Below are positions 19,492-64,000 of a stretch of 64,000 nucleotides of DNA, one piece after another. A program made the translations under genes and the position numbers. The stretch covers positions 62,001 through 126,000 of IMG/VR virus record IMGVR_UViG_3300040801_004034; one strand, given 5' to 3'. Position 1 is the first letter of the stretch, and the number at the start of each line of letters is the position of its first letter. Under the pieces are notes generated by a model. That model was not told where the DNA came from, did not search any database, and saw only the letters and a program-made list of their open reading frames with translations.

Positions 19492-20219
19492 TGAAAAATT
19501 TTTATTACACAATACCGCAATCAAAATATACATTATTGTGTGATTTCTATGCTTTAGAATTGATTAACCACTATCGTGTTTAACACGATTGTGTATTTCC
19601 AACTAAATTATCGTTCTCTATCGATTGTGCAAGAGATACGATTTGTAATTATCTCATTCCATATCTATGTGATCAAATGTTTGTTGGTATTATCGCTGAA
19701 TTCTGTTTTGAAGGTCTTGACGAAGCTAATATTGTTGAGCAAAGCAAATTTAATTATCTCACACAGTTTTTTGATACGATCAATGAAATGAAGCACTTGC
19801 CTGATTTAGTTATGTTACACAGGATTAACGTTATTTCTAACGATATTAAATTACAAATAGCCTGTCACAATCACACACGTATTGATTTTGTTCGGTTCTT
19901 TAAGTCTTTATTAGATCATGACGATTTTTGGGTAAATATCGCTGATACATACATAGAGTTACACAGTTGTAATGATATAGACAAAAAAATATTATACATA
20001 GATCAATGCATACATATTCAACATTATTCTGGTTCAGTGCTTGATAAATCATTAGATCTACTACCTATTATTGATATGTTTTTACGTATGAAACGAAAAA
20101 TAACCTGTCTTTCTGATTATATCAATATTGGTGTGTCAGTGACTATGCACAAAATACTATTAAATACTATACAGATAGTTACAAGATATGATAAAAGATT
20201 TAGGACACTGGGAATATAA
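19491..20219 (+). pseudogene. Hypothetical gene (242 codons) with an internal TAA at 19581-19583
   Basis: ATG 19491 overlaps the previous stop and is in frame with ORF 19677..20219; only one stop lies between them. Confidence 0.55.
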
Positions 20220-20592
20220 TGGTGAAATACCAGATGATTGTTTTGGTTTCATTTATGAAATCACAAACAACAAAACTAACCGTAAATACATAGGCAAAAA
20301 GCAAATGCAGAAGCGTATTAAACGCAAACCACTTAAAGGTAAGAAGCGAAACCGTATTTGCTGGTTAGAAAGCGACTGGAAAACATATACTGGTAGCTGC
20401 AGGGAACTTAATGAGGAAATAGAACAGTATGGTAAGGAACACTTTACGTTTGAAATACTAAAACTATGTTGTTCTAAATCAGATCTTGCATATAATGAAA
20501 TTAAGTTACAACTAGAAAAAGATGTGTTGTTAAGAGAAGAATATTTCAATGGCATTATCAACTGCCGTCTTGGGAAAGTTAAGCTATCTTGA
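20188..20592 (+). CDS. Short GIY-YIG nuclease conserved in T4-like phages
   Basis: FGFIYEITN....KYIGKK...ESDWKTYTGS; catalytic domain only. Confidence 0.8.
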   Translation: MIKDLGHWEYNGEIPDDCFGFIYEITNNKTNRKYIGKKQMQKRIKRKPLKGKKRNRICWLESDWKTYTGSCRELNEEIEQYGKEHFTFEILKLCCSKSDLAYNEIKLQLEKDVLLREEYFNGIINCRLGKVKLS

Positions 20593-20625: not shown

Positions 20626-21174
20626 ATGGTAGTAGAGCCACATAACTTTGAAATCGTTGATTTTAATAAACTTCTAAAAAGTAGTATTCAGATTAATATC
20701 GTTGATAATCTGTTTGATCTTAGCCTGGATGAAAATAAAAAACTTGGTAATGATATAAGAAATATAATGTTTCACCATATCATACATGGGTTATGTGAGC
20801 ATATTCTCAAAAAACAGAGTAAAGTGGTTGTGATATGTTGTGAAACAGAGTTTGAGTGTAGTGATCTTTACACGTTATATAGTAAAGAATCAGTTGATAA
20901 AGCTATTGTTAGTGCAATACGTAAGATTTCATCTTCATTACCAATATGCGTTTATAGAACACAACGAAATTTCAACACGATCGTTAAAATACTTGAGTCT
21001 AATGATGGTATGAGCGGAACACTTATAAATTCATTCAAATGTGCTATTGAAAAGAAGAATATTTCATCATATAACTTCAGCAAAATTAAAAAGATAGCTC
21101 AAACATACAATTTAACATTTTTAAACAAAGAATATTTTAACAACCTATCAACAAAGTTACTTCTAGTAAGGTAA
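20626..21174 (+). CDS. Hypothetical protein
   Basis: 182-aa ORF with TTGATT/TATAAT promoter. Confidence 0.55.
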   Translation: MVVEPHNFEIVDFNKLLKSSIQINIVDNLFDLSLDENKKLGNDIRNIMFHHIIHGLCEHILKKQSKVVVICCETEFECSDLYTLYSKESVDKAIVSAIRKISSSLPICVYRTQRNFNTIVKILESNDGMSGTLINSFKCAIEKKNISSYNFSKIKKIAQTYNLTFLNKEYFNNLSTKLLLVR

Positions 21175-21220
21175 ATCAAAAACTACTTAGAGTCATAGTT
21201 CGATATACATAAATAATGAT

Positions 21221-21847
21221 ATGGATAAGTTTACACGATTAGCAGAATCAGTTTGTCATACAATTAACGAGAATGCAGAAACACAGCAAGCACAGAGTGC
21301 TGCTATTGCGTTCAGGGATGAATTTTACGAACTGTATAAAAAATACTCAATAGATGATATCAGTCTTCAAGAATACAATGACAAGTATGATATGATCAAA
21401 ACCAAAGCTAAAGCAACACTTGATGCAAAAGCTCCTATCTGGGCGATTGATCCTGAAAAAGCTGGTGAATTCTCTGATGACTATAAGTCTGAAAATGGTG
21501 TTAGACCAAATCTCGATCAATGGGATGAACAAGAAGTGGATGATTGGACTGAAAGAAACAGATCGAGCAGCGAAGATGGTGAATCGCTTGCTTCAACTGT
21601 TCGTCCATTAGATGGTTTCTTTACAGGTGCTGATCAACCTTATATTAGTGATGAAGAAAGTACTGAAGAAGGGTTTCTAACACCAGACCAAACAACAGCA
21701 TTGAATACAGCTAAATCTCTTGCAACAAAACCAAAAGGTGGTATAAATCCATTCAACAAGCCACAGAAACAGATTGATAAAGCTCTTGGTGATATGTATA
21801 GTAAAGTAGCTAATAAAGTAACAAAAGTTTCAAGCCAAATCAAATAA
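21221..21847 (+). CDS. Hypothetical late protein (possible internal head protein)
   Basis: TAAATA-N5-ATG; N-terminus MDKFTRLAES..TINE. Confidence 0.6.
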   Translation: MDKFTRLAESVCHTINENAETQQAQSAAIAFRDEFYELYKKYSIDDISLQEYNDKYDMIKTKAKATLDAKAPIWAIDPEKAGEFSDDYKSENGVRPNLDQWDEQEVDDWTERNRSSSEDGESLASTVRPLDGFFTGADQPYISDEESTEEGFLTPDQTTALNTAKSLATKPKGGINPFNKPQKQIDKALGDMYSKVANKVTKVSSQIK

Positions 21848-21848
21848 T

Positions 21849-22166
21849 ATGAGTAAATTTCTAGAATCATTAAACCGTTATTATGAAAACACAGGTCTTG
21901 ATCAACCAGTTGAAGACCCGAATGCAGAAATGCCTATGCCTGAACCAGAAGGTGAGCCAGAAGCAGCTCCTGAACCGGAAGTTGATCCATTAACATCTGA
22001 AGGTGAAGTTCATTTAACAAGATTACTTCGTAAAGCTCTTCTAATGAATGTTGAAGAAGGTGATGTGGATGACATCGCACTTGAAGATGATATCAACGAA
22101 ACAAATAGTCGCCAGATGGTAGATAAAATCATCGGTGTTATGCGGAAGTATACAGACGATATTTAA
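21849..22166 (+). CDS. Hypothetical acidic protein
   Basis: Pro/Glu-rich 105-aa ORF; N-terminus MSKFLESLNRYYE. Confidence 0.6.
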   Translation: MSKFLESLNRYYENTGLDQPVEDPNAEMPMPEPEGEPEAAPEPEVDPLTSEGEVHLTRLLRKALLMNVEEGDVDDIALEDDINETNSRQMVDKIIGVMRKYTDDI

Positions 22167-22169
22167 TTT

Positions 22170-23150
22170 ATGGTAATACCAGATAATAACGTCCGTATAT
22201 TTGCGAAGATAAACGGACGCGAGATGCTTCATATCGGTGATGTTGTAACAAACTATTATCATGATGTATTGGTTAAACATGTTGAATTAGGTTCTATTGA
22301 AAAGGTCCGAATACGTAAACTCATCAAAGAACGACTTGATAGTTGTGGTGGTAATATCAATCAAAATGTCGATATCTGGCAAGATTATATAAATGAGGGT
22401 AATTTTGACCTCGTTGATGAAAAGTTTTTACGTTGTGAAAACATGTTACTCGATAAAATTCAGAATCATGATGTTTTCAGTCTTAATGAACTCATTTCAG
22501 CTGGTTGGAATGAAGCAAACATTAACAATCAATATTTTGACCAGGCATTTGAAACCGTACCAGAAGCGCCATTGTTTGGTAGACCAGGAGCTAGTGAGTT
22601 ATATTTAGCTTTCTTCTGTAATGGTGAAAAACCGAAAAAAGGTGATTTGAATGTCGGTGGGGTTGATATTGAACTTAAAGGCCCGGGCGGTAGATTATAT
22701 AAGACACCAAAACTTGTTACTGATTTTTCAGTACTCGATCAACAACTCGAAACAACCAGTGAAATTTTAAATGCTGTTGCGGATTTTATCAGTGGTTATG
22801 CTGGTACATTACATTTGAGATCACAAATTGGTGATATGGTTAATTTATTCGCAGCTGAATGTGAAAGGGAATACTTATACTATAAAGACAGAAACAAATT
22901 AAGACCAAAGAACATTCTTGTATATATAGGTGGGTTATCTCAATTATTTTCATATCAGAGTGCACAGGGGTTTGATGTTTTTACATCCTTTTCAAAATCA
23001 GATGATAATATCCAATTTAAAACTATCGACTTCAGACAAATATCCAATTTATTAGAGTTACACGCTGCTATTAAAAAAAATACATGGTTGAAATTTTCAA
23101 GAAATATTGATGGTAACGGTTGGTGCTTAGATAGAACACAAATAAAATAA
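22170..23150 (+). CDS. PD-(D/E)xK restriction-endonuclease-like protein
   Basis: GASELYLAF...KGDLNVGGVDIELKG motif. Confidence 0.55.
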   Translation: MVIPDNNVRIFAKINGREMLHIGDVVTNYYHDVLVKHVELGSIEKVRIRKLIKERLDSCGGNINQNVDIWQDYINEGNFDLVDEKFLRCENMLLDKIQNHDVFSLNELISAGWNEANINNQYFDQAFETVPEAPLFGRPGASELYLAFFCNGEKPKKGDLNVGGVDIELKGPGGRLYKTPKLVTDFSVLDQQLETTSEILNAVADFISGYAGTLHLRSQIGDMVNLFAAECEREYLYYKDRNKLRPKNILVYIGGLSQLFSYQSAQGFDVFTSFSKSDDNIQFKTIDFRQISNLLELHAAIKKNTWLKFSRNIDGNGWCLDRTQIK

Positions 23151-23154
23151 AATT

Positions 23155-23916
23155 ATGGGCGGAAATGCTGTAACAAATGTAGGACCAATTCATATTGACG
23201 AAATTGGTCCCACAATAGAAGCTCTCGAACAGGCACTCGGTATAAAATTGAGAGATAATACTCTTGGTTCAGTTGGTAAAAAAGACATATCAGGTGACAT
23301 CGATATAGCTATTGATATAAAAGTTGAAGACAGGCTTGATTTTATTGAACATCTTAAAACTTGTTGGATTGTACATGAAGTATCATTATCCTCTGTTGCA
23401 AGTACAAAAGTTGAGATAGTTAATTATAATCCAGATGTTAAAGCTGATAATCGAACAGGTTATGTACAGGTTGATTTTATGTTTGGTGATCCTGAATGGC
23501 TCAAACTTTTTTACCATTCACCATCTCAAAGTGAATCTAAATGGAAAGGCGCACATCGAAATGCTATGATATGTGCAATAACACAAGTTCATAAGTATAC
23601 AACTAGAGAAGGTATTACCTGGAGATATTCATGGTCACCGAAACGAGGTTTAATATATGTTAGGCGAGAACCAAAAATAGGTAAAAATGGTCGATTACTT
23701 AAAGCAACTATTGAAACACCAATTCATGGACCATATAGAACCGCTAGCGGAATAATTGATAATCTAGGTTTAAATTTTGTAAATGATTTAACCTCATATG
23801 AATCTCTTAGAGATGCTGTTAAGCTTAATTACTCACCTGTAAAAGCTGCATTAGTTATGGAGAAATTTAGAGAAAGTAGTCACTTAGAAAAAATGGGTGG
23901 AATCCCGCAAGATTAA
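23155..23916 (+). CDS. Pol-beta superfamily nucleotidyltransferase
   Basis: LGSVGKK..SGDIDIAID (GS...DxD) plus a third Asp in VQVDFM. Confidence 0.8.
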   Translation: MGGNAVTNVGPIHIDEIGPTIEALEQALGIKLRDNTLGSVGKKDISGDIDIAIDIKVEDRLDFIEHLKTCWIVHEVSLSSVASTKVEIVNYNPDVKADNRTGYVQVDFMFGDPEWLKLFYHSPSQSESKWKGAHRNAMICAITQVHKYTTREGITWRYSWSPKRGLIYVRREPKIGKNGRLLKATIETPIHGPYRTASGIIDNLGLNFVNDLTSYESLRDAVKLNYSPVKAALVMEKFRESSHLEKMGGIPQD

Positions 23917-23917
23917 C

Positions 23918-24802
23918 ATGAGTTCACGCAAAAGTATACAACATCTTTACTCATTAAATAAGCCTGATGTTTACTCAATGGATTTCTTTACTCTCAAAGA
24001 GTTCGCTGAAGAATTATCTAAGATAAATGGAATCATCGAACCTGGTAATACAACAGTATCTGAAAAAGTGGATGGTTCGGCTATATTCTTCGGTAAAGAA
24101 GACGGTAAGTTTTATATGGAAAGTAGCCATTCAGGTAAGGTATTCAAAGCAGAAGATTTTGAAGATGGTTCTCATGTACGATACCCTCAACACCCTTTAG
24201 CTCGAAAAGCATTTAGGGATAATTTTGATTCAATATTTGCTTTGGTAGGTCATACAATTAGTGATTATAACAACGTTCGAATTCAAGCTGAATGGTTTTA
24301 TACACCAATGGCTAAAAGATGTGTTAATCGTCATGGTTACGTGTTATTCATCGAGACTGATTACATTAAAGCTAAGCTTGGAAGATTGAGTACGTTTGTT
24401 GTGATTGATGCACCGAAAGAAGTTCAAAACAGATTGCTTGCTATTAATACTGTTGATGTCAAATTCTTATCACCTAAAATATCATCATTTCTTATTGTTG
24501 ATCTTAGTAAAGAACTGCAACAGCTCCAAGAAGCATTAAATATAGTTGAAGAGGAAACTGATATAGAAGCATTAAACCAACCAGCACGAAAGAAAGAAGA
24601 TAGACAAAGAAGAAACACAGTATTGGAATCAATTGAAAGACACTTATTACCACTTCAGGAATCTATTTATCATAAAATATATAATAAACTAACTAATGGT
24701 ACTGGTATACTTGGTGATATTGAAGGTTTTGTAGTAACATTAGGTCATATAACATTTAAAGTAAACAATCCACAATTCATGAAACGTAAATTCAACTTAT
24801 GA
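23918..24802 (+). CDS. ATP-dependent ligase-like covalent nucleotidyltransferase (RNA-ligase-like)
   Basis: Motif I EKVDG, motif III QAE, motif IV EGFVV, motif V FKV. Confidence 0.7.
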   Translation: MSSRKSIQHLYSLNKPDVYSMDFFTLKEFAEELSKINGIIEPGNTTVSEKVDGSAIFFGKEDGKFYMESSHSGKVFKAEDFEDGSHVRYPQHPLARKAFRDNFDSIFALVGHTISDYNNVRIQAEWFYTPMAKRCVNRHGYVLFIETDYIKAKLGRLSTFVVIDAPKEVQNRLLAINTVDVKFLSPKISSFLIVDLSKELQQLQEALNIVEEETDIEALNQPARKKEDRQRRNTVLESIERHLLPLQESIYHKIYNKLTNGTGILGDIEGFVVTLGHITFKVNNPQFMKRKFNL

Positions 24803-25500
24803 AACGAAAATTTAAAATACCGACACCAAAAACAAAAACCATTAACTTTGAATCAGCATACGATAAATTCAGTGATATTTCATCGCTACTGAATGAGTTT
24901 GATGAACAGAAGCATAAAAACGTGTTCGTTTTTTATCCTGGTAGGTTTCATCCATTCCATACCGGTCATACATCTATTTATCATGCATTGCAACAGCAAT
25001 TCCCTGACAGTCATGTTATTATAACAACATCTGATAAAGTTGATCCGCCAAATTCTCCATTCACGTTTGATGAAAAATACAAAATGATGGTTGTAGCTGG
25101 TGTTGATCCAGATTCAATTGCTGAAACACAATCACCATACCGAGCTACTGAAGTAGTGGAAGTACTTCCTGAAAATGCAATTACCATTTTTGCAATATCA
25201 GAAAAAGATATGAAAGGATCCAAAGCTAGAATCAACTTCAATCCTAAGAAAGATGGTTCACCAAGCTATCTTCAACCATTTGAATCAATTGAGGAATGTA
25301 AAGGTAGAATGGAGCACGGTTATGTAACAACATTACCTACATTGGATTTTGATTTAATGGGTAGCAATATCAATTCTGCAAGTGAATTAAGAAAAATATA
25401 TGCAGATGCAGATGAAATTAAGCGCCAGCAAATTATACAATATTTGTATGGTCGATTAGATGAAGAAATCTATAAGATCTTCAACCTTAAGATCGATTAA
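24799..25500 (+). CDS. HxGH (cytidylyltransferase/NMNAT-like) nucleotidyltransferase
   Basis: YPGRFHPFHTGH, PFTFDEK and SASELR motifs. Confidence 0.85.
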   Translation: MKRKFKIPTPKTKTINFESAYDKFSDISSLLNEFDEQKHKNVFVFYPGRFHPFHTGHTSIYHALQQQFPDSHVIITTSDKVDPPNSPFTFDEKYKMMVVAGVDPDSIAETQSPYRATEVVEVLPENAITIFAISEKDMKGSKARINFNPKKDGSPSYLQPFESIEECKGRMEHGYVTTLPTLDFDLMGSNINSASELRKIYADADEIKRQQIIQYLYGRLDEEIYKIFNLKID

Positions 25501-25884: not shown

Positions 25885-26787
25885 TTATTTAAGCTTATGC
25901 ATAATAGCTAAACCTTCATCTAATTTGATAGATGGCACCCACCCTATATGTTCCCGTATCTTCGAGCAATCGACTCTACAACCATTGTAATCATTTGCTC
26001 TTGCTGGCTTGTTAACAACTCTTGAAATACTATCTGTTAGATTGATAATCTTTTCAGCAAGTTCCTTCATAGTAACTATTTCATCACCATCAATATTGTA
26101 TGTCTGGTTTGCGCATATCGGGTTTAATACTGCTACATTAGCACTAGCATGGTCATTAACATTAAGAAATGAACGTGTTGGTCCATTATCATCACCTTGT
26201 ACAACAATATTCCAATGTTTGTTAGCACTTTCAAAAAATCTCATAACAACACTGCTCGGATGACCATTAGGACCATATGCTGTACCATATCTCAAAATTG
26301 TATAATCAATACCATATACTGCACTATACATCTTCACGATTTGTTCACCAATGAGTTTACTTTGTGAGTATATATTACGTTGTGTTTCATCAGGTAAACG
26401 AGTTGTTTCATTCGCTGAATCTAATCCTGAATATACATGCACACTACTAGGAAAAATAAACCGTTTTATGTTATGCTTTCTGCATAATTCAAGTGCGTTG
26501 GTCAGTCCTTTAATATTAAGTTCGTTACCCTTCTCAGGATTTTGTTTATATTCATTTACAATTGTAACAGCTGGAAAGAAAAACATGCAATCAAATTCCT
26601 TGTTATCTAACAATTTATCAACCGTATCCAGGTAACATATGTTACCGTATGTTTCATAGAATGATTCAGTAAACCGATTATGTGTATGTGAAATATCAAT
26701 ACTAACAACTTCATGATTATCATCAAGTAATTTTTGACATGTTTTTTGGCCTATAAATCCTGATCCACCTAATACTACAATTTTCAT
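25885..26787 (-). CDS. NAD-dependent nucleotide-sugar epimerase/dehydratase
   Basis: GGSGFIG, SS..VY, YSQSK and LRYGTAYGP motifs. Confidence 0.9.
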   Translation of the reverse strand: MKIVVLGGSGFIGQKTCQKLLDDNHEVVSIDISHTHNRFTESFYETYGNICYLDTVDKLLDNKEFDCMFFFPAVTIVNEYKQNPEKGNELNIKGLTNALELCRKHNIKRFIFPSSVHVYSGLDSANETTRLPDETQRNIYSQSKLIGEQIVKMYSAVYGIDYTILRYGTAYGPNGHPSSVVMRFFESANKHWNIVVQGDDNGPTRSFLNVNDHASANVAVLNPICANQTYNIDGDEIVTMKELAEKIINLTDSISRVVNKPARANDYNGCRVDCSKIREHIGWVPSIKLDEGLAIMHKLK

Positions 26788-27605: not shown

Positions 27606-28409
27606 ATGACAATAAAAGAAAGACGATTAGATTTACTTAAGAAATACATCATAAAAATAGAGGGTGAATTTTTTACACTATGCAATGATTTTTTTGCACC
27701 GTTTGAAGGAGCTGGTCAGTTTATTGATGATCATACATTGAAAGTTTTTAATATCACAACAAACCAGCCTTGTACAATCGATATTAGAAGTAGTTTCGTA
27801 TTTACCTTTTCTGACCCTGCAAATGAGCACCCAAGCTTATTATTATTAAAGACTGAAGATGAACAATTTGAATATAATATGTTTGTTATATCAAATTTTG
27901 TTGAACGCGCTAAACTATTTGAATTAATCGTAAACCGTGCATCTTTATTCAATAAAAAAATATATAAAACAGTAAAGGAATCATGTGAAAAATTATTTAC
28001 AACACATAAAATCGATGATCATTCTACAATGTTTTGTCTAATGTTTAATATTAACCCTATAACCGGTAGCGTTAGATTACCACAGTTTAGAAAAACATGG
28101 AAAATGGTAGTTGCGGTGTATAGTGAGAAGGCAAAAACGAAACTACGTTCTGAGATTGAAAAGAATGCAGAAAATGCGGATGATCTTGAAACTCTTATTG
28201 ATGTAGTCGACCAGTCTGTGTCACACTGTTATGATGAAATAGATGAAATTACTGATATTGAAGATGCAATGTTAACATGGCCGAGAGTTTTGTTACCCGC
28301 ACCGGAGTTTATTGTAAATAGTAACACCGGTCGGTTTATTTACATGGATTTACCGAGTTCAGTGAGTAAAATAAAGGATGACGACTCAGACGAAAACGAA
28401 GCCGGTTAG
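27606..28409 (+). CDS. Hypothetical protein
   Basis: 267-aa ORF; C-terminal helical region ending TWP..LLPAP. Confidence 0.5.
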   Translation: MTIKERRLDLLKKYIIKIEGEFFTLCNDFFAPFEGAGQFIDDHTLKVFNITTNQPCTIDIRSSFVFTFSDPANEHPSLLLLKTEDEQFEYNMFVISNFVERAKLFELIVNRASLFNKKIYKTVKESCEKLFTTHKIDDHSTMFCLMFNINPITGSVRLPQFRKTWKMVVAVYSEKAKTKLRSEIEKNAENADDLETLIDVVDQSVSHCYDEIDEITDIEDAMLTWPRVLLPAPEFIVNSNTGRFIYMDLPSSVSKIKDDDSDENEAG

Positions 28410-29031
28410 AAACGTACTCGTAATAGCTCCACACGCTGACGACGAAATATTAGGTTGTGGCGGTACACTTTTGAAGCTTGTTGAACAAGGGTACACAACA
28501 TATTGCGTTATCTGCTGTAAGCGAAAAGATGAGAAACAGATACAAGCAGTAAGAGGCAATAAAAAGATACATACAAAAAACCTCTTTTTTTTAAATTACC
28601 CGGATGAGCGTCTTTATACCAAGAAAGATGAATGTCTTAAGAAAATAGAAGCTGTATATAACAGTCTACAACCTGAAATAGTATTCATCCCATCATATAA
28701 TGACATCAATTTAGATCATAAAGTGGTAAACGAGTTAAGTTTGATTGTTTGTCGACGTTTTCAGGAACATACACCTTCAGTTGTGTATGAATATGAAGTA
28801 CCATCAACATCTACCCAGTCTCCTGGAACATTTCAACCTAATGTTTATTTTACTCTTACTACTGATCATGTCGATACGAAAGTTCTAGCATTTTATCATT
28901 ATATTGATGAAATAAGAGAGTTTCCTAACCCACGATCTATTATAGGTTTACAAACATACTGTAAGTTTAGAGGTATGGAATGTAATAGTGAATATGCTGA
29001 AGGTTTTAAGGTTGTTTTTCAGAAATTATAA
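28378..29031 (+). CDS. PIG-L/LmbE family N-acetyl-sugar deacetylase
   Basis: VIAPHADDEILGCGG, D.N.DH, YEYE and AEGF motifs. Confidence 0.9.
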   Translation: MTTQTKTKPVRNVLVIAPHADDEILGCGGTLLKLVEQGYTTYCVICCKRKDEKQIQAVRGNKKIHTKNLFFLNYPDERLYTKKDECLKKIEAVYNSLQPEIVFIPSYNDINLDHKVVNELSLIVCRRFQEHTPSVVYEYEVPSTSTQSPGTFQPNVYFTLTTDHVDTKVLAFYHYIDEIREFPNPRSIIGLQTYCKFRGMECNSEYAEGFKVVFQKL

Positions 29032-63451: not shown

Positions 63452-63549
63452 CGTTTTAATCCATATAATCTAGGCAAGAGCTTGCAGGCTTATCATTTAG
63501 GTTATATGGCGCCAGATATATAGTAACTGCAATTACAAATATACCTGCG

Positions 63550-63617
63550 TTGTATCGGTCGGCTGGCGGAGACGCCCTCGTGAAGAGGGAGGTGATTGGT
63601 TCGATTCCAATATACAA
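63550..63617 (+). tRNA. Degenerate tRNA-like element (identity unclear)
   Basis: Canonical T-arm ATTGG-TTCGATT-CCAAT, CCCTC/GAGGG stem with GTGAA loop, short TTGTAT/ATACAA acceptor. Confidence 0.45.
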
Positions 63618-63710
63618 ATTCGATATTTATACCTATGCAAGTCATGTGTGAGTCATGGGGACGAAACATATAATAAACCACATGTCATGTATATGTTTCA
63701 AATTTTATAA

Positions 63711-63797
63711 GCCTAGGTGGCTCAGTTGGTCGACAGCGCCTGCTTTGTAAGCAGGATCCTACAGGACTCGTGGGTTCGAATCCCACCCTAGGCTCCA
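63711..63797 (+). tRNA. trnT: tRNA-Thr(UGU) with extended variable arm
   Basis: GCCTAGG/CCTAGGC acceptor, CCTGC-TTTGTAA-GCAGG anticodon arm, GTGGG-TTCGAAT-CCCAC T-arm, encoded CCA. Confidence 0.9.
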
Positions 63798-63839
63798 TTT
63801 TGATTGTAGTTTTCGAGTTACGTTTGATTAAGTATTTAT

Positions 63840-64000
63840 ATGATAACATGTATGCAATGCAATAAATTGATTCCTAATCAGGAATCGATAGCTCATAAAT
63901 ATCAAAAACGTTTTTGTGATAGTTCTTGTAGTGCAAAATACAATAACACAAAACGTAAATATAAAAAACAACCAAAAAGCAAGTGTTTGAATTGCGATAA
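63840..64000 (+). CDS. Partial ORF: zinc-ribbon N-terminus of a probable homing endonuclease
   Basis: MITCMQC...FCDSSCSAKYNN...CLNC; TAAGTA-N5-ATG; runs off the window. Confidence 0.6.
   Translation, partial: MITCMQCNKLIPNQESIAHKYQKRFCDSSCSAKYNNTKRKYKKQPKSKCLNCD

What the first reader, a model, noticed from the sequence alone, without database searches (positions are those of the whole stretch)
22170..25500. Operon of three unrelated nucleotidyltransferase folds plus a restriction-like nuclease
Tightly coupled genes encode a PD-(D/E)xK protein, a Pol-beta NTase, a KxDG ligase-like adenylyltransferase and an HxGH (NMNAT/cytidylyltransferase-like) enzyme, downstream of a late promoter (21210) and two acidic putative head proteins. 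Three nucleotide-transfer chemistries in one unit suggest a single pathway. Options are RNA/tRNA end repair against anticodon nucleases, NAD or signal-nucleotide synthesis, or protein/DNA nucleotidylation. The HxGH protein has an LLNE leader consistent with packaging. I know of no functional characterisation of this module.
Basis: partly seen in the sequence, partly recalled or inferred. Interest (0 to 1): 0.68.

Follow-up and report, generated by a model that had tools for sequence, protein, structure and literature searches.

The report
Capsid-targeted ligase, polymerase-beta and HIGH nucleotidyltransferase module
A T4-like phage carries a late-expressed operon whose three different nucleotide-transferring enzymes (an RNA-ligase-like enzyme, a polymerase-beta-type enzyme and an NMNAT-like enzyme) occur as one fused protein in related phages and bear T4-style capsid-targeting leaders, so they probably form one uncharacterised nucleic-acid end-repair kit that is injected with the DNA.

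Summary
Four tightly coupled ORFs lie at 22170-25500 behind two acidic proteins and a late-promoter-like CATAAATA.

- P3 is a ligase-fold enzyme. Its model matches Naegleria RNA ligase at Z 10 and T4 Rnl2 at about Z 8, and its KxDG, EGxV and FK motifs are invariant.
- P4 is a HIGH nucleotidyltransferase (Pfam PF01467 above cut-off), nearest to NMNAT but not an equivalog.
- P2 carries the polymerase-beta GS...DxD...D signature.
- P1 has an invariant E..D..ExK motif, but only weak fold support.

P2, P3 and P4 are one 789-aa protein in a syntenic relative. P2-type enzymes sit beside or fused to a ligase-like protein in 77 of 79 loci. Ligase-HIGH fusions number about 100 clusters. P1 is linked only within the window's own lineage.

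New here: relatives' module proteins start with T4 CTS-like leaders ending in (L/I)xE. The same motif marks the domain junctions in two of the three fusion proteins examined. The genome encodes a gp21-type prohead protease, and a PA5oct homologue of P2 is a virion protein.

The genome has canonical DNA ligase, Rnl2 and CCA enzyme elsewhere, so this is an extra system. The best reading is a packaged, injected RNA-end repair module. The substrate is unproven.

The parts
21208..21215 (+). Late-promoter-like CATAAATA, 6 nt before the start codon of the first gene of the unit
   Evidence: Sequence read. ATAAATA-N6-start recurs at 17 ORFs of the genome, including the tail sheath and homing endonucleases. 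There is no exact TATAAATA here.
21221..21847 (+). Acidic 208-aa protein (pI 4.6) with the T4 CTS-like N-terminus MDKFTRLAE; candidate capsid internal protein
   Evidence: Homologues stand in the same position in L082, L084 and L105 with leaders of the same pattern, two of which (L084, L105) end in L-x-E.
21849..22166 (+). Acidic 105-aa protein (pI 4.1), proline- and glutamate-rich; candidate capsid internal protein
   Evidence: Proteins of 94 and 103 aa stand in the same position, between the acid1 homologue and the P1 homologue, in L082 and L084, with the leaders MKFIKTINKILE and MKKFLKTFNTILE.
22170..23150 (+). P1: phage-specific 326-aa protein with an invariant E143...D159...E168-x-K170 motif; probable PD-(D/E)xK nuclease fold
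   Evidence: 14 homologues and their invariant residues. AF2 model at pLDDT 79. Only weak fold matches: HinP1I, MspI, NaeI and HhaI at Z about 3. The nearest named Atlas clusters are SmaI, HinP1I and Eco47II restriction enzymes at 0.80-0.82. No Pfam or PHROG hit.
23155..23916 (+). P2: 253-aa polymerase-beta-superfamily nucleotidyltransferase of an unnamed phage family; starts MGGN, exactly where relatives' leaders end
   Evidence: LGSxGKxxxSGDIDxA plus VQVDFMF are invariant. The Atlas model resembles an NTP_transf_2 cluster at TM 0.79. 34% identical to PA5oct gp231, annotated as a structural protein by ESI-MS/MS. No hit to Pfam RlaP or NTP_transf_2.
23897..24802 (+). P3: 301-aa (294 aa from the ATG at 23918) ligase-type covalent nucleotidyltransferase domain with a helical insert and no OB domain
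   Evidence: AF2 model at pLDDT 77.6. Matches Naegleria RNA ligase at Z 10.0, rmsd 3.4 over 178 residues; T4 Rnl2 at Z about 8; DNA ligases at about 7. Foldseek's top hit is T4 Rnl2 at E 6e-4. Motifs are invariant. Pfam RNA-ligase hits fall below cut-off.
24799..25500 (+). P4: 233-aa HIGH-superfamily nucleotidyltransferase, nearest to NMNAT, with a 33-residue N-terminal leader or linker ending in LLNE
   Evidence: PF01467 at 30 bits against a cut-off of 21; phrog_395 at 1.9e-11. NMNAT families are the best NCBIfam and PDB hits but lie far below their cut-offs. The H54-T-G-H57 and S-A-S-E-L-R198 motifs are present.

Best explanation
The unit from 21208 to 25500 is a late operon. It encodes two acidic internal-protein-like products, a probable PD-(D/E)xK nuclease (P1) and a three-enzyme core that works as one machine: a Pol-beta-type nucleotidyltransferase (P2), a ligase-fold enzyme closest to nick-sealing RNA ligases (P3) and an NMNAT-like HIGH nucleotidyltransferase (P4).

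Proposed mechanism:
1. The proteins are made late and targeted into the prohead by T4 CTS-like N-terminal leaders.
2. The gp21-type prohead protease trims them after (L/I)xE. In relatives that encode fusion proteins, the same cut separates the domains.
3. They are injected with the DNA.
4. In the newly infected cell they mend broken nucleic-acid ends, most likely RNA such as tRNA. P2 adds back missing 3' nucleotides. P3 adenylylates and seals. P4 supplies or recycles the adenylyl donor (NAD+/ATP) or adenylylates 5'-phosphate ends directly. P1, where present, trims ends.

Shown here: gene linkage and fusion, fold and motif assignments, the leader motifs, the presence of the protease gene, and the separate existence of canonical DNA ligase, Rnl2 and CCA enzyme in the same genome.

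Inferred: packaging and injection, RNA as the substrate, the order of the steps, and the role of P4.
For: Linkage:
- P2 homologues were found in 74 IMG/VR loci.
- Across the 79 loci with a P2-family match (84 loci scanned, excluding the window's own copy), 77 have a ligase-like gene adjacent or fused: DUF6267 in 73 and the P3 family in 4.
- Fusions occur in several orders: HIGH-P2-DUF6267 (815 aa), DUF6267-P2 (632 aa) and P2-DUF6267-HIGH (about 900 aa).
- Among 150 P3-family representatives there are P2-P3 x6, P3-P2 x3, P3-HIGH x5 and P2-P3-HIGH x2.
- L105 has the window's gene order, but with P2-P3-P4 as one 789-aa ORF that is 43%, 48% and 24% identical to the three window proteins.
- A third ligase-like family carries a HIGH domain in 99 of its 120 top clusters.

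Folds.

The RNA lean:
- The best structural matches of P3 are RNA ligases.
- In P0194 the Pol-beta partner is replaced by a canonical CCA/poly(A)-type head domain, in a T4-like contig beside PARG, a tRNA-ligase-CPD-like gene and a DHH gene.
- The genome carries 39 tRNAs and has its own replicative DNA ligase elsewhere.
- The RlaP precedent exists (PMC7824862; bioRxiv 10.64898/2025.12.29.696909).

Packaging:
- (L/I/V/M/F)xE lies directly before GG in 46 of 54 distinct P2 sequences. The other 8 start at or within a few residues of that point.
- It also lies there in about 105 of 110 Lig' sequences, both N-terminal and internal.
- Leaders such as MRTFKQHYNILNE, MISFKKYYGHVIKE, MKTFKQHFRLINE and MRFSDFKIVE resemble what PMC9026906 describes for T4 internal proteins: a 10-residue N-terminal CTS with processing determinants at residues 8 and 10 and cleavage after Glu (paper read).
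- The leader motif is found in 59-93% of proteins in the conserved block, against 11-16% in the background.
- A gp21-type protease gene is present.
- PA5oct gp231 is annotated as a virion protein by MS.
- The neighbouring gene belongs to phrog_11854, 'virion structural protein'.
- A late-promoter-like motif precedes the unit.
Against: - There is no biochemical evidence for any activity or substrate.
- The module has no end-healing kinase or phosphatase, which classical tRNA repair after anticodon nucleases needs.
- The genome already has a canonical Rnl2-type ligase and a CCA enzyme, so an RNA-repair role would be partly redundant.
- In this window P1, P2 and P3 themselves lack leaders. Only the first acidic protein has one, and P4 has an internal LLNE.
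- The LxE-GG motif could be a structural feature of the domains rather than a cleavage site.
- The only direct virion evidence is a GenBank annotation for a 34%-identical homologue in a distant jumbo phage.
- P3 is not detectably a member of DUF6267 (hhalign E 1e-3 at 20% probability). The three ligase-like families are united by motifs and context, and only P3 was folded.
- The role of a HIGH enzyme in repair has no precedent that I could find.
- Co-folding of P2 with P3 gave no verdict.
Confidence: 0.4

Rival explanations
1. DNA-end repair of the injected genome. P2 acts as a minimal Pol X-like gap-filling or terminal transferase, P3 as a DNA nick or end ligase and P1 as an end-processing nuclease. 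Together they would form a packaged NHEJ/BER-like kit that reseals restriction, CRISPR or nicking damage as the DNA enters.
For: - The P2 motif GSxGKxxxxGDxD plus a third Asp resembles Pol X palm motifs (recalled knowledge).
- One homologue has a weak DNA_pol_B_thumb hit at E 0.018, and an Atlas lead points to 'DNA polymerase beta palm' at 0.84.
- P3 also matches DNA ligases at Z about 7.
- A restriction-enzyme-like P1 would naturally act on DNA.
- Delivery with the DNA fits protection of that DNA.
Against: - P3 lacks the OB domain of DNA ligases, and its best matches are RNA ligases.
- One relative substitutes a CCA/poly(A)-type RNA enzyme for P2.
- The genome has a canonical DNA ligase.
- The Pol X leads are all below significance.
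Confidence: 0.2
2. Nucleotide-cofactor or signal metabolism. P4 is an NMN adenylyltransferase that rebuilds NAD+ against NAD-depleting defences. The ligase-like and Pol-beta enzymes would make or consume NAD-derived or other signalling nucleotides rather than joining nucleic acids.
For: - The nearest curated families to P4 are NMNATs.
- PRPP-synthetase-like genes lie near the P2-DUF6267 pair in 14 loci.
- PARG lies beside the HIGH-ligase-CCA fusion.
- Phage NAD+ salvage by HIGH enzymes is established (PMC9503650).
Against: - P4 scores far below the NMNAT cut-offs (31 bits against 127), and the match covers only the first 60 or so residues.
- No nicotinamide phosphoribosyltransferase stands in the unit.
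- This reading does not explain the invariant ligase motifs or the near-obligate pairing with a Pol-beta enzyme.
- No hit to defence or counter-defence models.
Confidence: 0.13
3. Offensive modification of host macromolecules by injected enzymes. The module would tail, cap (for example an NAD-type cap made by the HIGH enzyme on 5'-triphosphate RNA) or nucleotidylate host RNAs or proteins to take over the cell, in the manner of T4 Alt.
For: - The capsid-targeting evidence places the enzymes in the cell at time zero, as for T4 Alt (PMC9026906).
- Very large multidomain relatives, one with a ParB_N domain, resemble polyvalent injected effectors (PMC5512222).
- P1 has weak resemblance to the DXO/Rai1/eIF3d cap-binding fold at Foldseek E 0.5-2.
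Against: - All the cap-related structural hits are insignificant.
- The ligase fold and the Pol-beta pairing have a direct, characterised repair precedent in RlaP.
- No target-recognition domain is evident.
Confidence: 0.12
4. The four genes are merely adjacent, without a common function.
For: P1 is absent from most loci that carry the other three genes, and the P4-type domain is absent from 66 of the P2-DUF6267 loci.
Against: Repeated independent fusions occur in several domain orders, and adjacency is near-obligate.
Confidence: 0.03

Closest known systems
[quoted passage not shown]
   Same: A Pol-beta-superfamily nucleotidyltransferase is genomically coupled to an ATP-grasp-type RNA ligase. 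RlaP adds one or two nucleotides to damaged RNA 3' ends before ligation. Such pairs are common in large phages with many tRNAs.
   Different: - P2 gives no match to PF10127.
- P3 falls below the Pfam RNA-ligase cut-offs.
- A HIGH nucleotidyltransferase is a third, often fused, partner.
- The proteins carry capsid-targeting-like leaders.
- No kinase, phosphatase or Hen1 accompanies them.
Naegleria gruberi RNA ligase (Rnl5 type) and T4 RNA ligase 2
   Same: The nucleotidyltransferase domain fold matches (Z 10.0 and about 8). Motif I KxDG, motif IV EGxV and the motif V lysine are present.
   Different: Identity is about 13%. P3 lacks the N-terminal OB-like domain of NgrRnl and the C-terminal domain of Rnl2, and has a helical insert of about 60 residues between motifs IIIa and IV. 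Its activity is untested.
Pfam DUF6267 (PF19782), e.g. Syn9 gp183; hypothetical proteins of T4-like cyanophages
   Same: It holds the same genomic position (directly after or fused to P2-type enzymes), has the same KxDG...GGEGYV...K motif pattern, and also fuses with HIGH domains.
   Different: P3 does not match the DUF6267 model. The profile-profile match is weak (E 1e-3). DUF6267 itself has no assigned function, and its fold was not modelled here.
T4 capsid internal proteins and Alt (CTS leaders, gp21 processing; PMC9026906)
   Same: Both are late-expressed. Both have short N-terminal leaders with I/L two residues before a Glu. A gp21-type protease is encoded in the genome. Acidic or basic small proteins are encoded alongside an enzyme destined for injection.
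   Different: The cargo here would be nucleic-acid enzymes, sometimes as a multi-domain precursor with the motif at domain junctions. Packaging is inferred, not shown. In this window P1, P2 and P3 lack leaders.
Phage NAD+ salvage enzymes NadM/NadR (HIGH NMN adenylyltransferases; PMC9503650, PMC7824862)
   Same: P4 is a HIGH-superfamily enzyme whose nearest curated relatives are NMNATs.
   Different: Scores lie far below the equivalog cut-offs. There is no Nudix or kinase fusion and no NadV partner in the unit. P4 is fused instead to ligase-like domains.

Membership tests
Covalent nucleotidyltransferase (ATP-dependent ligase / capping enzyme) superfamily - P3 | Motif I KxDG with the catalytic lysine | tested here: met
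   S55-E-K57-V-D59-G60 is invariant in 11 sequences.
Covalent nucleotidyltransferase (ATP-dependent ligase / capping enzyme) superfamily - P3 | Motifs III, IV and V (acidic residue, EGxV, lysine) | tested here: met
   E132, E276-G277-x-V279 and F287-K288 are invariant. Assigning them to the numbered motifs is my inference from their order and spacing.
Covalent nucleotidyltransferase (ATP-dependent ligase / capping enzyme) superfamily - P3 | Nucleotidyltransferase domain fold | tested here: met
   The model (pLDDT 77.6) matches NgrRnl at Z 10.0, rmsd 3.4 over 178 residues. All top hits are ligases.
Covalent nucleotidyltransferase (ATP-dependent ligase / capping enzyme) superfamily - P3 | Sequence-model membership (Pfam RNA_ligase / RNA_lig_T4_1 gathering score) | tested here: not met
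   18.2 bits against 27, and 19.3 bits against 28.3.
Covalent nucleotidyltransferase (ATP-dependent ligase / capping enzyme) superfamily - P3 | Formation of enzyme-AMP and strand joining | not testable with these tools
   Needs biochemistry.
Pfam DUF6267 (PF19782) - P3 | Match to the family model | tested here: not met
   No match in the genome at E up to 10. My own DUF6267 HMM, run with filters off, did not hit P3. hhalign gave E 1e-3 at 20% probability.
Polymerase-beta nucleotidyltransferase superfamily - P2 | hG[GS]x9-13Dh[DE]h signature plus a third downstream carboxylate | tested here: met
   L37-G38-S-x-G41...S46-G47-D48-I-D50 and V104-Q-x-D107-F-M are invariant in 18 sequences. The signature itself is recalled from the Aravind and Koonin 1999 classification.
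Polymerase-beta nucleotidyltransferase superfamily - P2 | Fold | tested here: inconclusive
   The Atlas's own model resembles a cluster carrying PF01909 at TM 0.79 over 240 residues. There are no Pfam or PDB sequence hits.
RlaP (PF10127) - P2 | Match to the family model | tested here: not met
   No match at E up to 10 in the genome.
RlaP (PF10127) - P2 | Genomic association with an RNA-ligase-type enzyme | tested here: met
   77 of 79 loci with a P2-family match have a ligase-like neighbour or fusion.
HIGH (cytidylyltransferase-like) nucleotidyltransferase superfamily - P4 | Pfam PF01467 above the gathering score | tested here: met
   30.0 bits against 21; 30.7 bits in the genome search.
HIGH (cytidylyltransferase-like) nucleotidyltransferase superfamily - P4 | (H/T)xGH motif and C-terminal ISxxxxR-type motif | tested here: met
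   H54-T-G-H57 and S193-A-S-E-L-R198 are present. H57 and R198 are conserved in at least 90% of 97 sequences.
NMN adenylyltransferase (NadM / archaeal NMNAT equivalogs) - P4 | Equivalog model score | tested here: not met
   31.3 bits against 127, and 27.4 bits against 181. The matches cover only about 60 residues.
PD-(D/E)xK nuclease superfamily - P1 | Catalytic E...D...(D/E)xK on an alpha-beta-beta-beta core | tested here: met
   E143 lies in helix 141-149, D159 just before strand 160-162, and E168-L-K170 in strand 165-170. All are invariant.
PD-(D/E)xK nuclease superfamily - P1 | Fold match to a known member | tested here: inconclusive
   The best matches to members are HinP1I, MspI, NaeI and HhaI at Z 3.0-3.1. 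Foldseek E values are above 0.5. Atlas feature scores are 0.80-0.82 to the SmaI, HinP1I and Eco47II clusters. All are below the tools' stated reliability marks.
T4-type capsid internal proteins (CTS-targeted, gp21-processed) | N-terminal leader of about 7-20 residues ending in (L/I)xE | tested here: met
   In the window the first acidic protein begins MDKFTRLAE. In relatives nearly every module protein has such a leader. Enrichment is 59-93% against 11-16% in the background. The window's P1, P2 and P3 lack it.
T4-type capsid internal proteins (CTS-targeted, gp21-processed) | gp21-family prohead protease in the same genome | tested here: met
   PF03420 at 102.8 bits, at G000 152664-153137.
T4-type capsid internal proteins (CTS-targeted, gp21-processed) | Presence in purified virions and cleavage at the motif | not testable with these tools
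   The only evidence is an annotation for PA5oct gp231 ('structural protein, ESI-MS/MS'), which is 34% identical to P2.

The most novel reading that the evidence does not exclude
T4-like and other large marine phages package a ready-made RNA-repair machine in the capsid. It comprises a ligase, a 3'-end nucleotidyltransferase and an NMNAT-like cofactor enzyme. In many lineages it is made as one precursor that the prohead protease cuts into separate enzymes, and it is injected with the DNA. Host tRNA- or RNA-cleaving defences would then be neutralised before any phage gene is expressed. This would be the first case of nucleic-acid repair enzymes as capsid internal proteins. It would also assign a function to DUF6267, a conserved 'hypothetical cyanophage protein' found in 306 phage records, 294 of them cyanophages.
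Probability: 0.3. Interest if true: 0.85.

Novelty: new variant of a known kind. Interest (0 to 1): 0.7.

Why it matters
If correct, this assigns a function to several large families of hypothetical phage proteins:
- DUF6267, found in 306 isolate genomes, mostly T4-like cyanophages.
- The P3 family, with 371 clusters at 50% identity.
- A third ligase-like family, with at least 1878 proteins.

It would extend the RlaP-ligase repair paradigm to a three-enzyme machine that includes a HIGH nucleotidyltransferase, a partner with no described role in nucleic-acid repair.

It would also show that T4-type capsid targeting is used to deliver repair enzymes, not only the ADP-ribosyltransferase Alt and anti-restriction proteins. 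That opens a testable question about what damage a phage must mend in the first seconds of infection.

The fusion-and-cleavage pattern offers a natural polyprotein strategy in a tailed phage. The enzymes may also be useful as new ligase or tailing reagents.

Tried and rejected
- Sequence searches of all four proteins against PDB chains gave nothing for P1, P2 and P3, and only weak NMNAT/PPAT hits for P4. Profile searches with the P2 and DUF6267 alignments gave only chance hits.
- blastn of the region and tblastn of P3 against isolate phages gave no match.
- The back-translated pattern search for P3 in IMG/VR gave nothing.
- P1 was compared with the proteins just upstream of the P2 homologues in Phosso and PA5oct, and P3 with the protein just downstream in Phosso. 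No similarity was found. The Phosso protein upstream of P2 later proved to be a P3-family member.
- Linking the three ligase-like families by profile-profile comparison gave insignificant results: E 1e-3, 0.03 and 0.1.
- The fold of P1 was searched in five libraries. No significant match to a solved structure emerged. The DXO/eIF3d hits were rejected as evidence because their E values are above 0.5.
- Co-folding of P2 with P3 returned no verdict (score 0.30 against a mark of 0.32), which counts neither for nor against binding.
- KptA/Tpt1, which would tie an NAD+ supply to repair, is absent from the genome.
- Defence-system models (PADLOC) gave no meaningful hit.
- The idea that the P2/P3/P4 split is an assembly frameshift of a fused gene was rejected. 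Contigs from four runs agree, and the junctions are TAAcATG and ATGA coupling sites.
- The idea that P3 is the phage's replicative DNA ligase was rejected, because a canonical PF01068 ligase lies elsewhere.
- One paper id for Burroughs and Aravind 2016 was not held. That work is cited only through PMC7824862.

Full report
**Setting**

- The window is bases 62001-126000 of a 221-kb, 33% G+C virus record that CheckV rates complete.
- Synteny in close relatives shows gp46/47-like nuclease genes, a UvsW-like helicase and a SegE-type homing endonuclease. The genome also has a gp21-type prohead protease and a tail sheath. Together these mark it as a T4-like myovirus.
- The only public runs that hold the region come from one microbial-mat metagenome.
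- The genome carries 39 tRNA genes and a tmRNA.

**The observation**

- Four ORFs fill 22170-25500 on the + strand with almost no spacing. I call them P1 (326 aa), P2 (253 aa), P3 (301 aa) and P4 (233 aa).
- The P2 stop is followed after one base by an ATG (TAAcATG). That ATG is a better P3 start than the GTG at 23897.
- P3 and P4 overlap in ATGA.
- Two acidic proteins (pI 4.6 and 4.1) precede them without gaps.
- The first acidic gene is preceded at six bases by CATAAATA. This is not the exact T4 late consensus, which is absent there. However, ATAAATA at that spacing precedes 17 ORFs of this genome, including the tail sheath and several homing endonucleases, so a late-promoter reading is reasonable.
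- The unit ends against convergent minus-strand genes.
- Contigs from four runs are identical across both gene junctions, so the three-gene arrangement is not an assembly artefact.

**What the proteins are**

*P3*
- It scores just below Pfam's RNA-ligase cut-offs.
- An AlphaFold model built on ten homologues (pLDDT 77.6) matches only ligases:
  - Naegleria gruberi RNA ligase, Z 10.0, rmsd 3.4 A over 178 residues;
  - T4 RNA ligase 2, Z about 8;
  - the trypanosome editing ligase, Z 7.7;
  - DNA ligases, Z about 7.
- K57 in KVDG, E132, EG-V at 276-279 and FK at 287-288 are invariant.
- It has a helical insert and no OB domain.

*P4*
- It passes Pfam's cytidylyltransferase-like model and has HTGH and SASELR motifs.
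- Its nearest curated families are NMN adenylyltransferases. The scores are a quarter of the cut-offs and cover only the first 60 or so residues. It is therefore a HIGH-superfamily enzyme of unknown substrate.

*P2*
- It has no hit in Pfam, PHROG or PDB.
- It carries an invariant LGSxGK...SGDIDxA plus VQVDFMF pattern, which is the polymerase-beta signature.
- The ESM Atlas model of this very sequence resembles a cluster carrying NTP_transf_2 at TM 0.79.

*P1*
- It belongs to a phage-only family.
- It has invariant E143, D159 and E168-x-K170 on a helix-strand-strand arrangement in the model.
- Fold searches gave only restriction enzymes at Z about 3, and language-model leads to the SmaI, HinP1I and Eco47II clusters at about 0.8.
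- I regard the PD-(D/E)xK assignment as likely but not demonstrated.

**Linkage**

- P2 homologues were found in 74 IMG/VR loci.
79 of them have a P2-family match, and 77 of those have a ligase-like gene adjacent or fused:

| Ligase-like partner of P2 | Loci |
|---|---|
| Pfam DUF6267 | 73 |
| P3 family | 4 |
| None | 2 |

- DUF6267 has KWDG, GGEGYV and a downstream lysine. It is a conserved hypothetical protein of T4-like cyanophages, pelagiphages and others, with 306 isolate records including Syn9 gp183.
- Fusions occur in several domain orders: HIGH-P2-DUF6267 (815 aa), DUF6267-P2 (632 aa) and P2-DUF6267-HIGH (about 900 aa).
- An exhaustive profile search with the P3 family found 371 representative clusters. 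The best 150 include P2-P3 (6), P3-P2 (3), P3-HIGH (5) and P2-P3-HIGH (2).
- One of the P2-P3-HIGH proteins lies on a contig (L105) with the window's gene order: the homologue of the gene at 20626, the acidic protein, a P1-family protein, then a single 789-aa ORF. That ORF is 43%, 48% and 24% identical to P2, P3 and P4.
- The closest relatives of P1 (50% identity) have P1 followed by a 598-aa protein. This is a third ligase-like domain (KIDG, HEGIVI, VKITG) fused to a P4 homologue.
- That third domain has at least 1878 relatives, and 99 of the top 120 clusters carry a HIGH domain at either end.
- In the cultured Sinorhizobium phage Phosso, gp446 is a P3-family protein and gp447 a P2-family protein.
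- P2, P3 and P4 are therefore a functional unit beyond reasonable doubt.
- P1 is linked only in the window's own lineage: six loci with a full-length neighbour, plus a short P1-like segment inside a 524-aa protein in L081.

**Not the housekeeping enzymes**

The same genome has a canonical ATP-dependent DNA ligase, a PolyA_pol/CCA-type enzyme and an Rnl2-type RNA ligase between 169 and 178 kb. The module is an additional system.

**Capsid targeting**

- In the P2 family, 46 of 54 distinct sequences have (L/I/V/M/F)-x-E immediately before a conserved GG. The other eight begin at or within a few residues of that point, six of them with M-(G/S)-(G/Q)-N in place of E-G-G-N.
- In two of the fusion architectures (L049, L052) the same motif sits at the junction before the P2 domain.
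- The third ligase-like family has it before GG(A/S)(A/G)GH in about 105 of 110 sequences, 41 of them internal.
- Relatives' module proteins begin with leaders such as MRTFKQHYNILNE, MISFKKYYGHVIKE, MKTFKQHFRLINE, MDKFTKLANSILKE and, for DUF6267, MRFSDFKIVE.
- In one tri-domain fusion (P0147) all three junctions read LSE, LSE and LNE. In L105's 789-aa protein the leader (INE) and the P2-P3 junction (IPE) conform, but the P3-HIGH junction has no clean L/I-x-E.
- A review of T4 head assembly (PMC9026906, read) states four relevant points:
  - internal proteins are targeted by a 10-residue N-terminal capsid targeting sequence;
  - processing depends on residues 8 and 10;
  - gp21 cuts after Glu;
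  - T4-like phages may use such leaders to load varied proteins.
- In the loci of the other clade, the block from an 87-aa protein (phrog_11854, 'virion structural protein') through P2, DUF6267 and the next genes shows the motif at residues 7-13 in 59-93% of proteins. The background is 11-16%, and the metabolic genes upstream show 0-9%.
- PA5oct gp231, 34% identical to P2, is annotated as a structural protein found by ESI-MS/MS.
- I conclude that packaging and protease processing are likely. No direct evidence exists for this phage.
- In this window only the first acidic protein (MDKFTRLAE) has a terminal leader. P4 has the motif at residue 33, which corresponds to the interdomain linker of the fusion.

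**Function**

The closest described system is the RlaP-RNA ligase pairing. It was predicted from gene neighbourhoods (PMC7824862). A 2025 preprint reports that RlaP adds one or two nucleotides to damaged RNA 3' ends and is required to restore function to heavily damaged, repaired tRNAs (10.64898/2025.12.29.696909). P2 is not an RlaP by sequence but occupies the same logical place.

Evidence that favours RNA:
- The structural neighbours of P3 are RNA ligases.
- In a 1324-aa relative, HIGH and P3 domains are followed by a canonical CCA/poly(A)-type enzyme in place of P2. It sits in a T4-like contig next to PARG, a tRNA-ligase-CPD-like gene and a DHH gene.
- The phage carries a large tRNA set.

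Evidence against a simple tRNA-repair reading:
- The module has no kinase or phosphatase.
- Canonical Rnl2 and CCA enzymes are already present elsewhere in the genome.
- The HIGH enzyme has no known role in repair.

P4 might supply or recycle the adenylyl donor or adenylylate 5' ends, but this is conjecture. KptA, which would consume NAD+ in repair, is absent.

Three rival readings remain open: DNA-end repair of the entering genome, NAD or signal-nucleotide metabolism, and offensive modification of host molecules.

**Novelty**

- I found no paper that mentions DUF6267, and none of the Aravind-group surveys I read describes this trio.
- The ligase plus Pol-beta logic is known.
- The families, the HIGH partner, the fusion-and-cleavage pattern and the capsid targeting are not.
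- I therefore rate it a new variant of a known kind.

Noticed in passing
window 21208-21215, and 16 other ORF starts across G000 (e.g. window 2876, 39840, 42598 regions): ATAAATA lies exactly 6 nt before the start codon of 17 ORFs, including the tail sheath and several homing endonucleases. This would give almost leaderless late transcripts. The exact T4 TATAAATA is not enriched in the window (7 found against 11 expected).
   Followed up: partly
window 63549-64000 and onward (G000 125549-143167): An array of 39 tRNA genes plus a tmRNA. It includes a tRNA with a CUA anticodon (a possible amber suppressor) at G000 138150-138226, outside the window.
   Followed up: no
G000 169379-169933, 172398-172787, 177216-177674 (outside the window): A canonical ATP-dependent DNA ligase, a PolyA_pol/CCA-type nucleotidyltransferase and an Rnl2-type RNA ligase lie within 9 kb of each other. 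This is a second, conventional nucleic-acid joining set in the same genome.
   Followed up: partly
window 25885-26787 (-), 28378-29031 (+): An NAD-dependent sugar-nucleotide epimerase/dehydratase and an LmbE/PIG-L-like deacetylase (motif HADDEILG) lie just downstream. Relatives have radical SAM/SPASM and glycosyltransferase genes there (L082). This could be a sugar-modification pathway unrelated to the module.
   Followed up: no
window 20188-20592: A GIY-YIG (SegE-type) homing endonuclease stands two genes upstream of the unit and is conserved in that position in relatives L082-L086.
   Followed up: no
protein P0085 (885 aa): The conserved GGSAGH motif of the third ligase-like domain occurs twice, flanking an insert of about 290 residues. 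This suggests an intein or an endonuclease-like insertion into the motif.
   Followed up: no
L104:2714-7957: In a T4-like contig, a DHH phosphoesterase, a tRNA-ligase-CPD-like protein and a bacterial-type PARG lie within about 5 kb upstream of the HIGH-ligase-CCA fusion protein, the PARG immediately before it, with two unannotated genes and a glycosyl hydrolase among them. Such a neighbourhood would fit RNA repair tied to ADP-ribose chemistry.
   Followed up: partly
L007:2863-5646 and the equivalent places in many of L005-L048: A PRPP-synthetase-like gene, a UDP-glucose dehydrogenase-like gene and a class 3 lipase recur just upstream of the P2-DUF6267 pair. They lack the (L/I)xE leader.
   Followed up: partly
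window 22170 versus 22224: The public gene call for P1 (P0011, 308 aa) starts at Met19. Homologues instead extend about 24 residues further upstream, with an MSWKSLDQVYLQE leader that the window's protein lacks.
   Followed up: no
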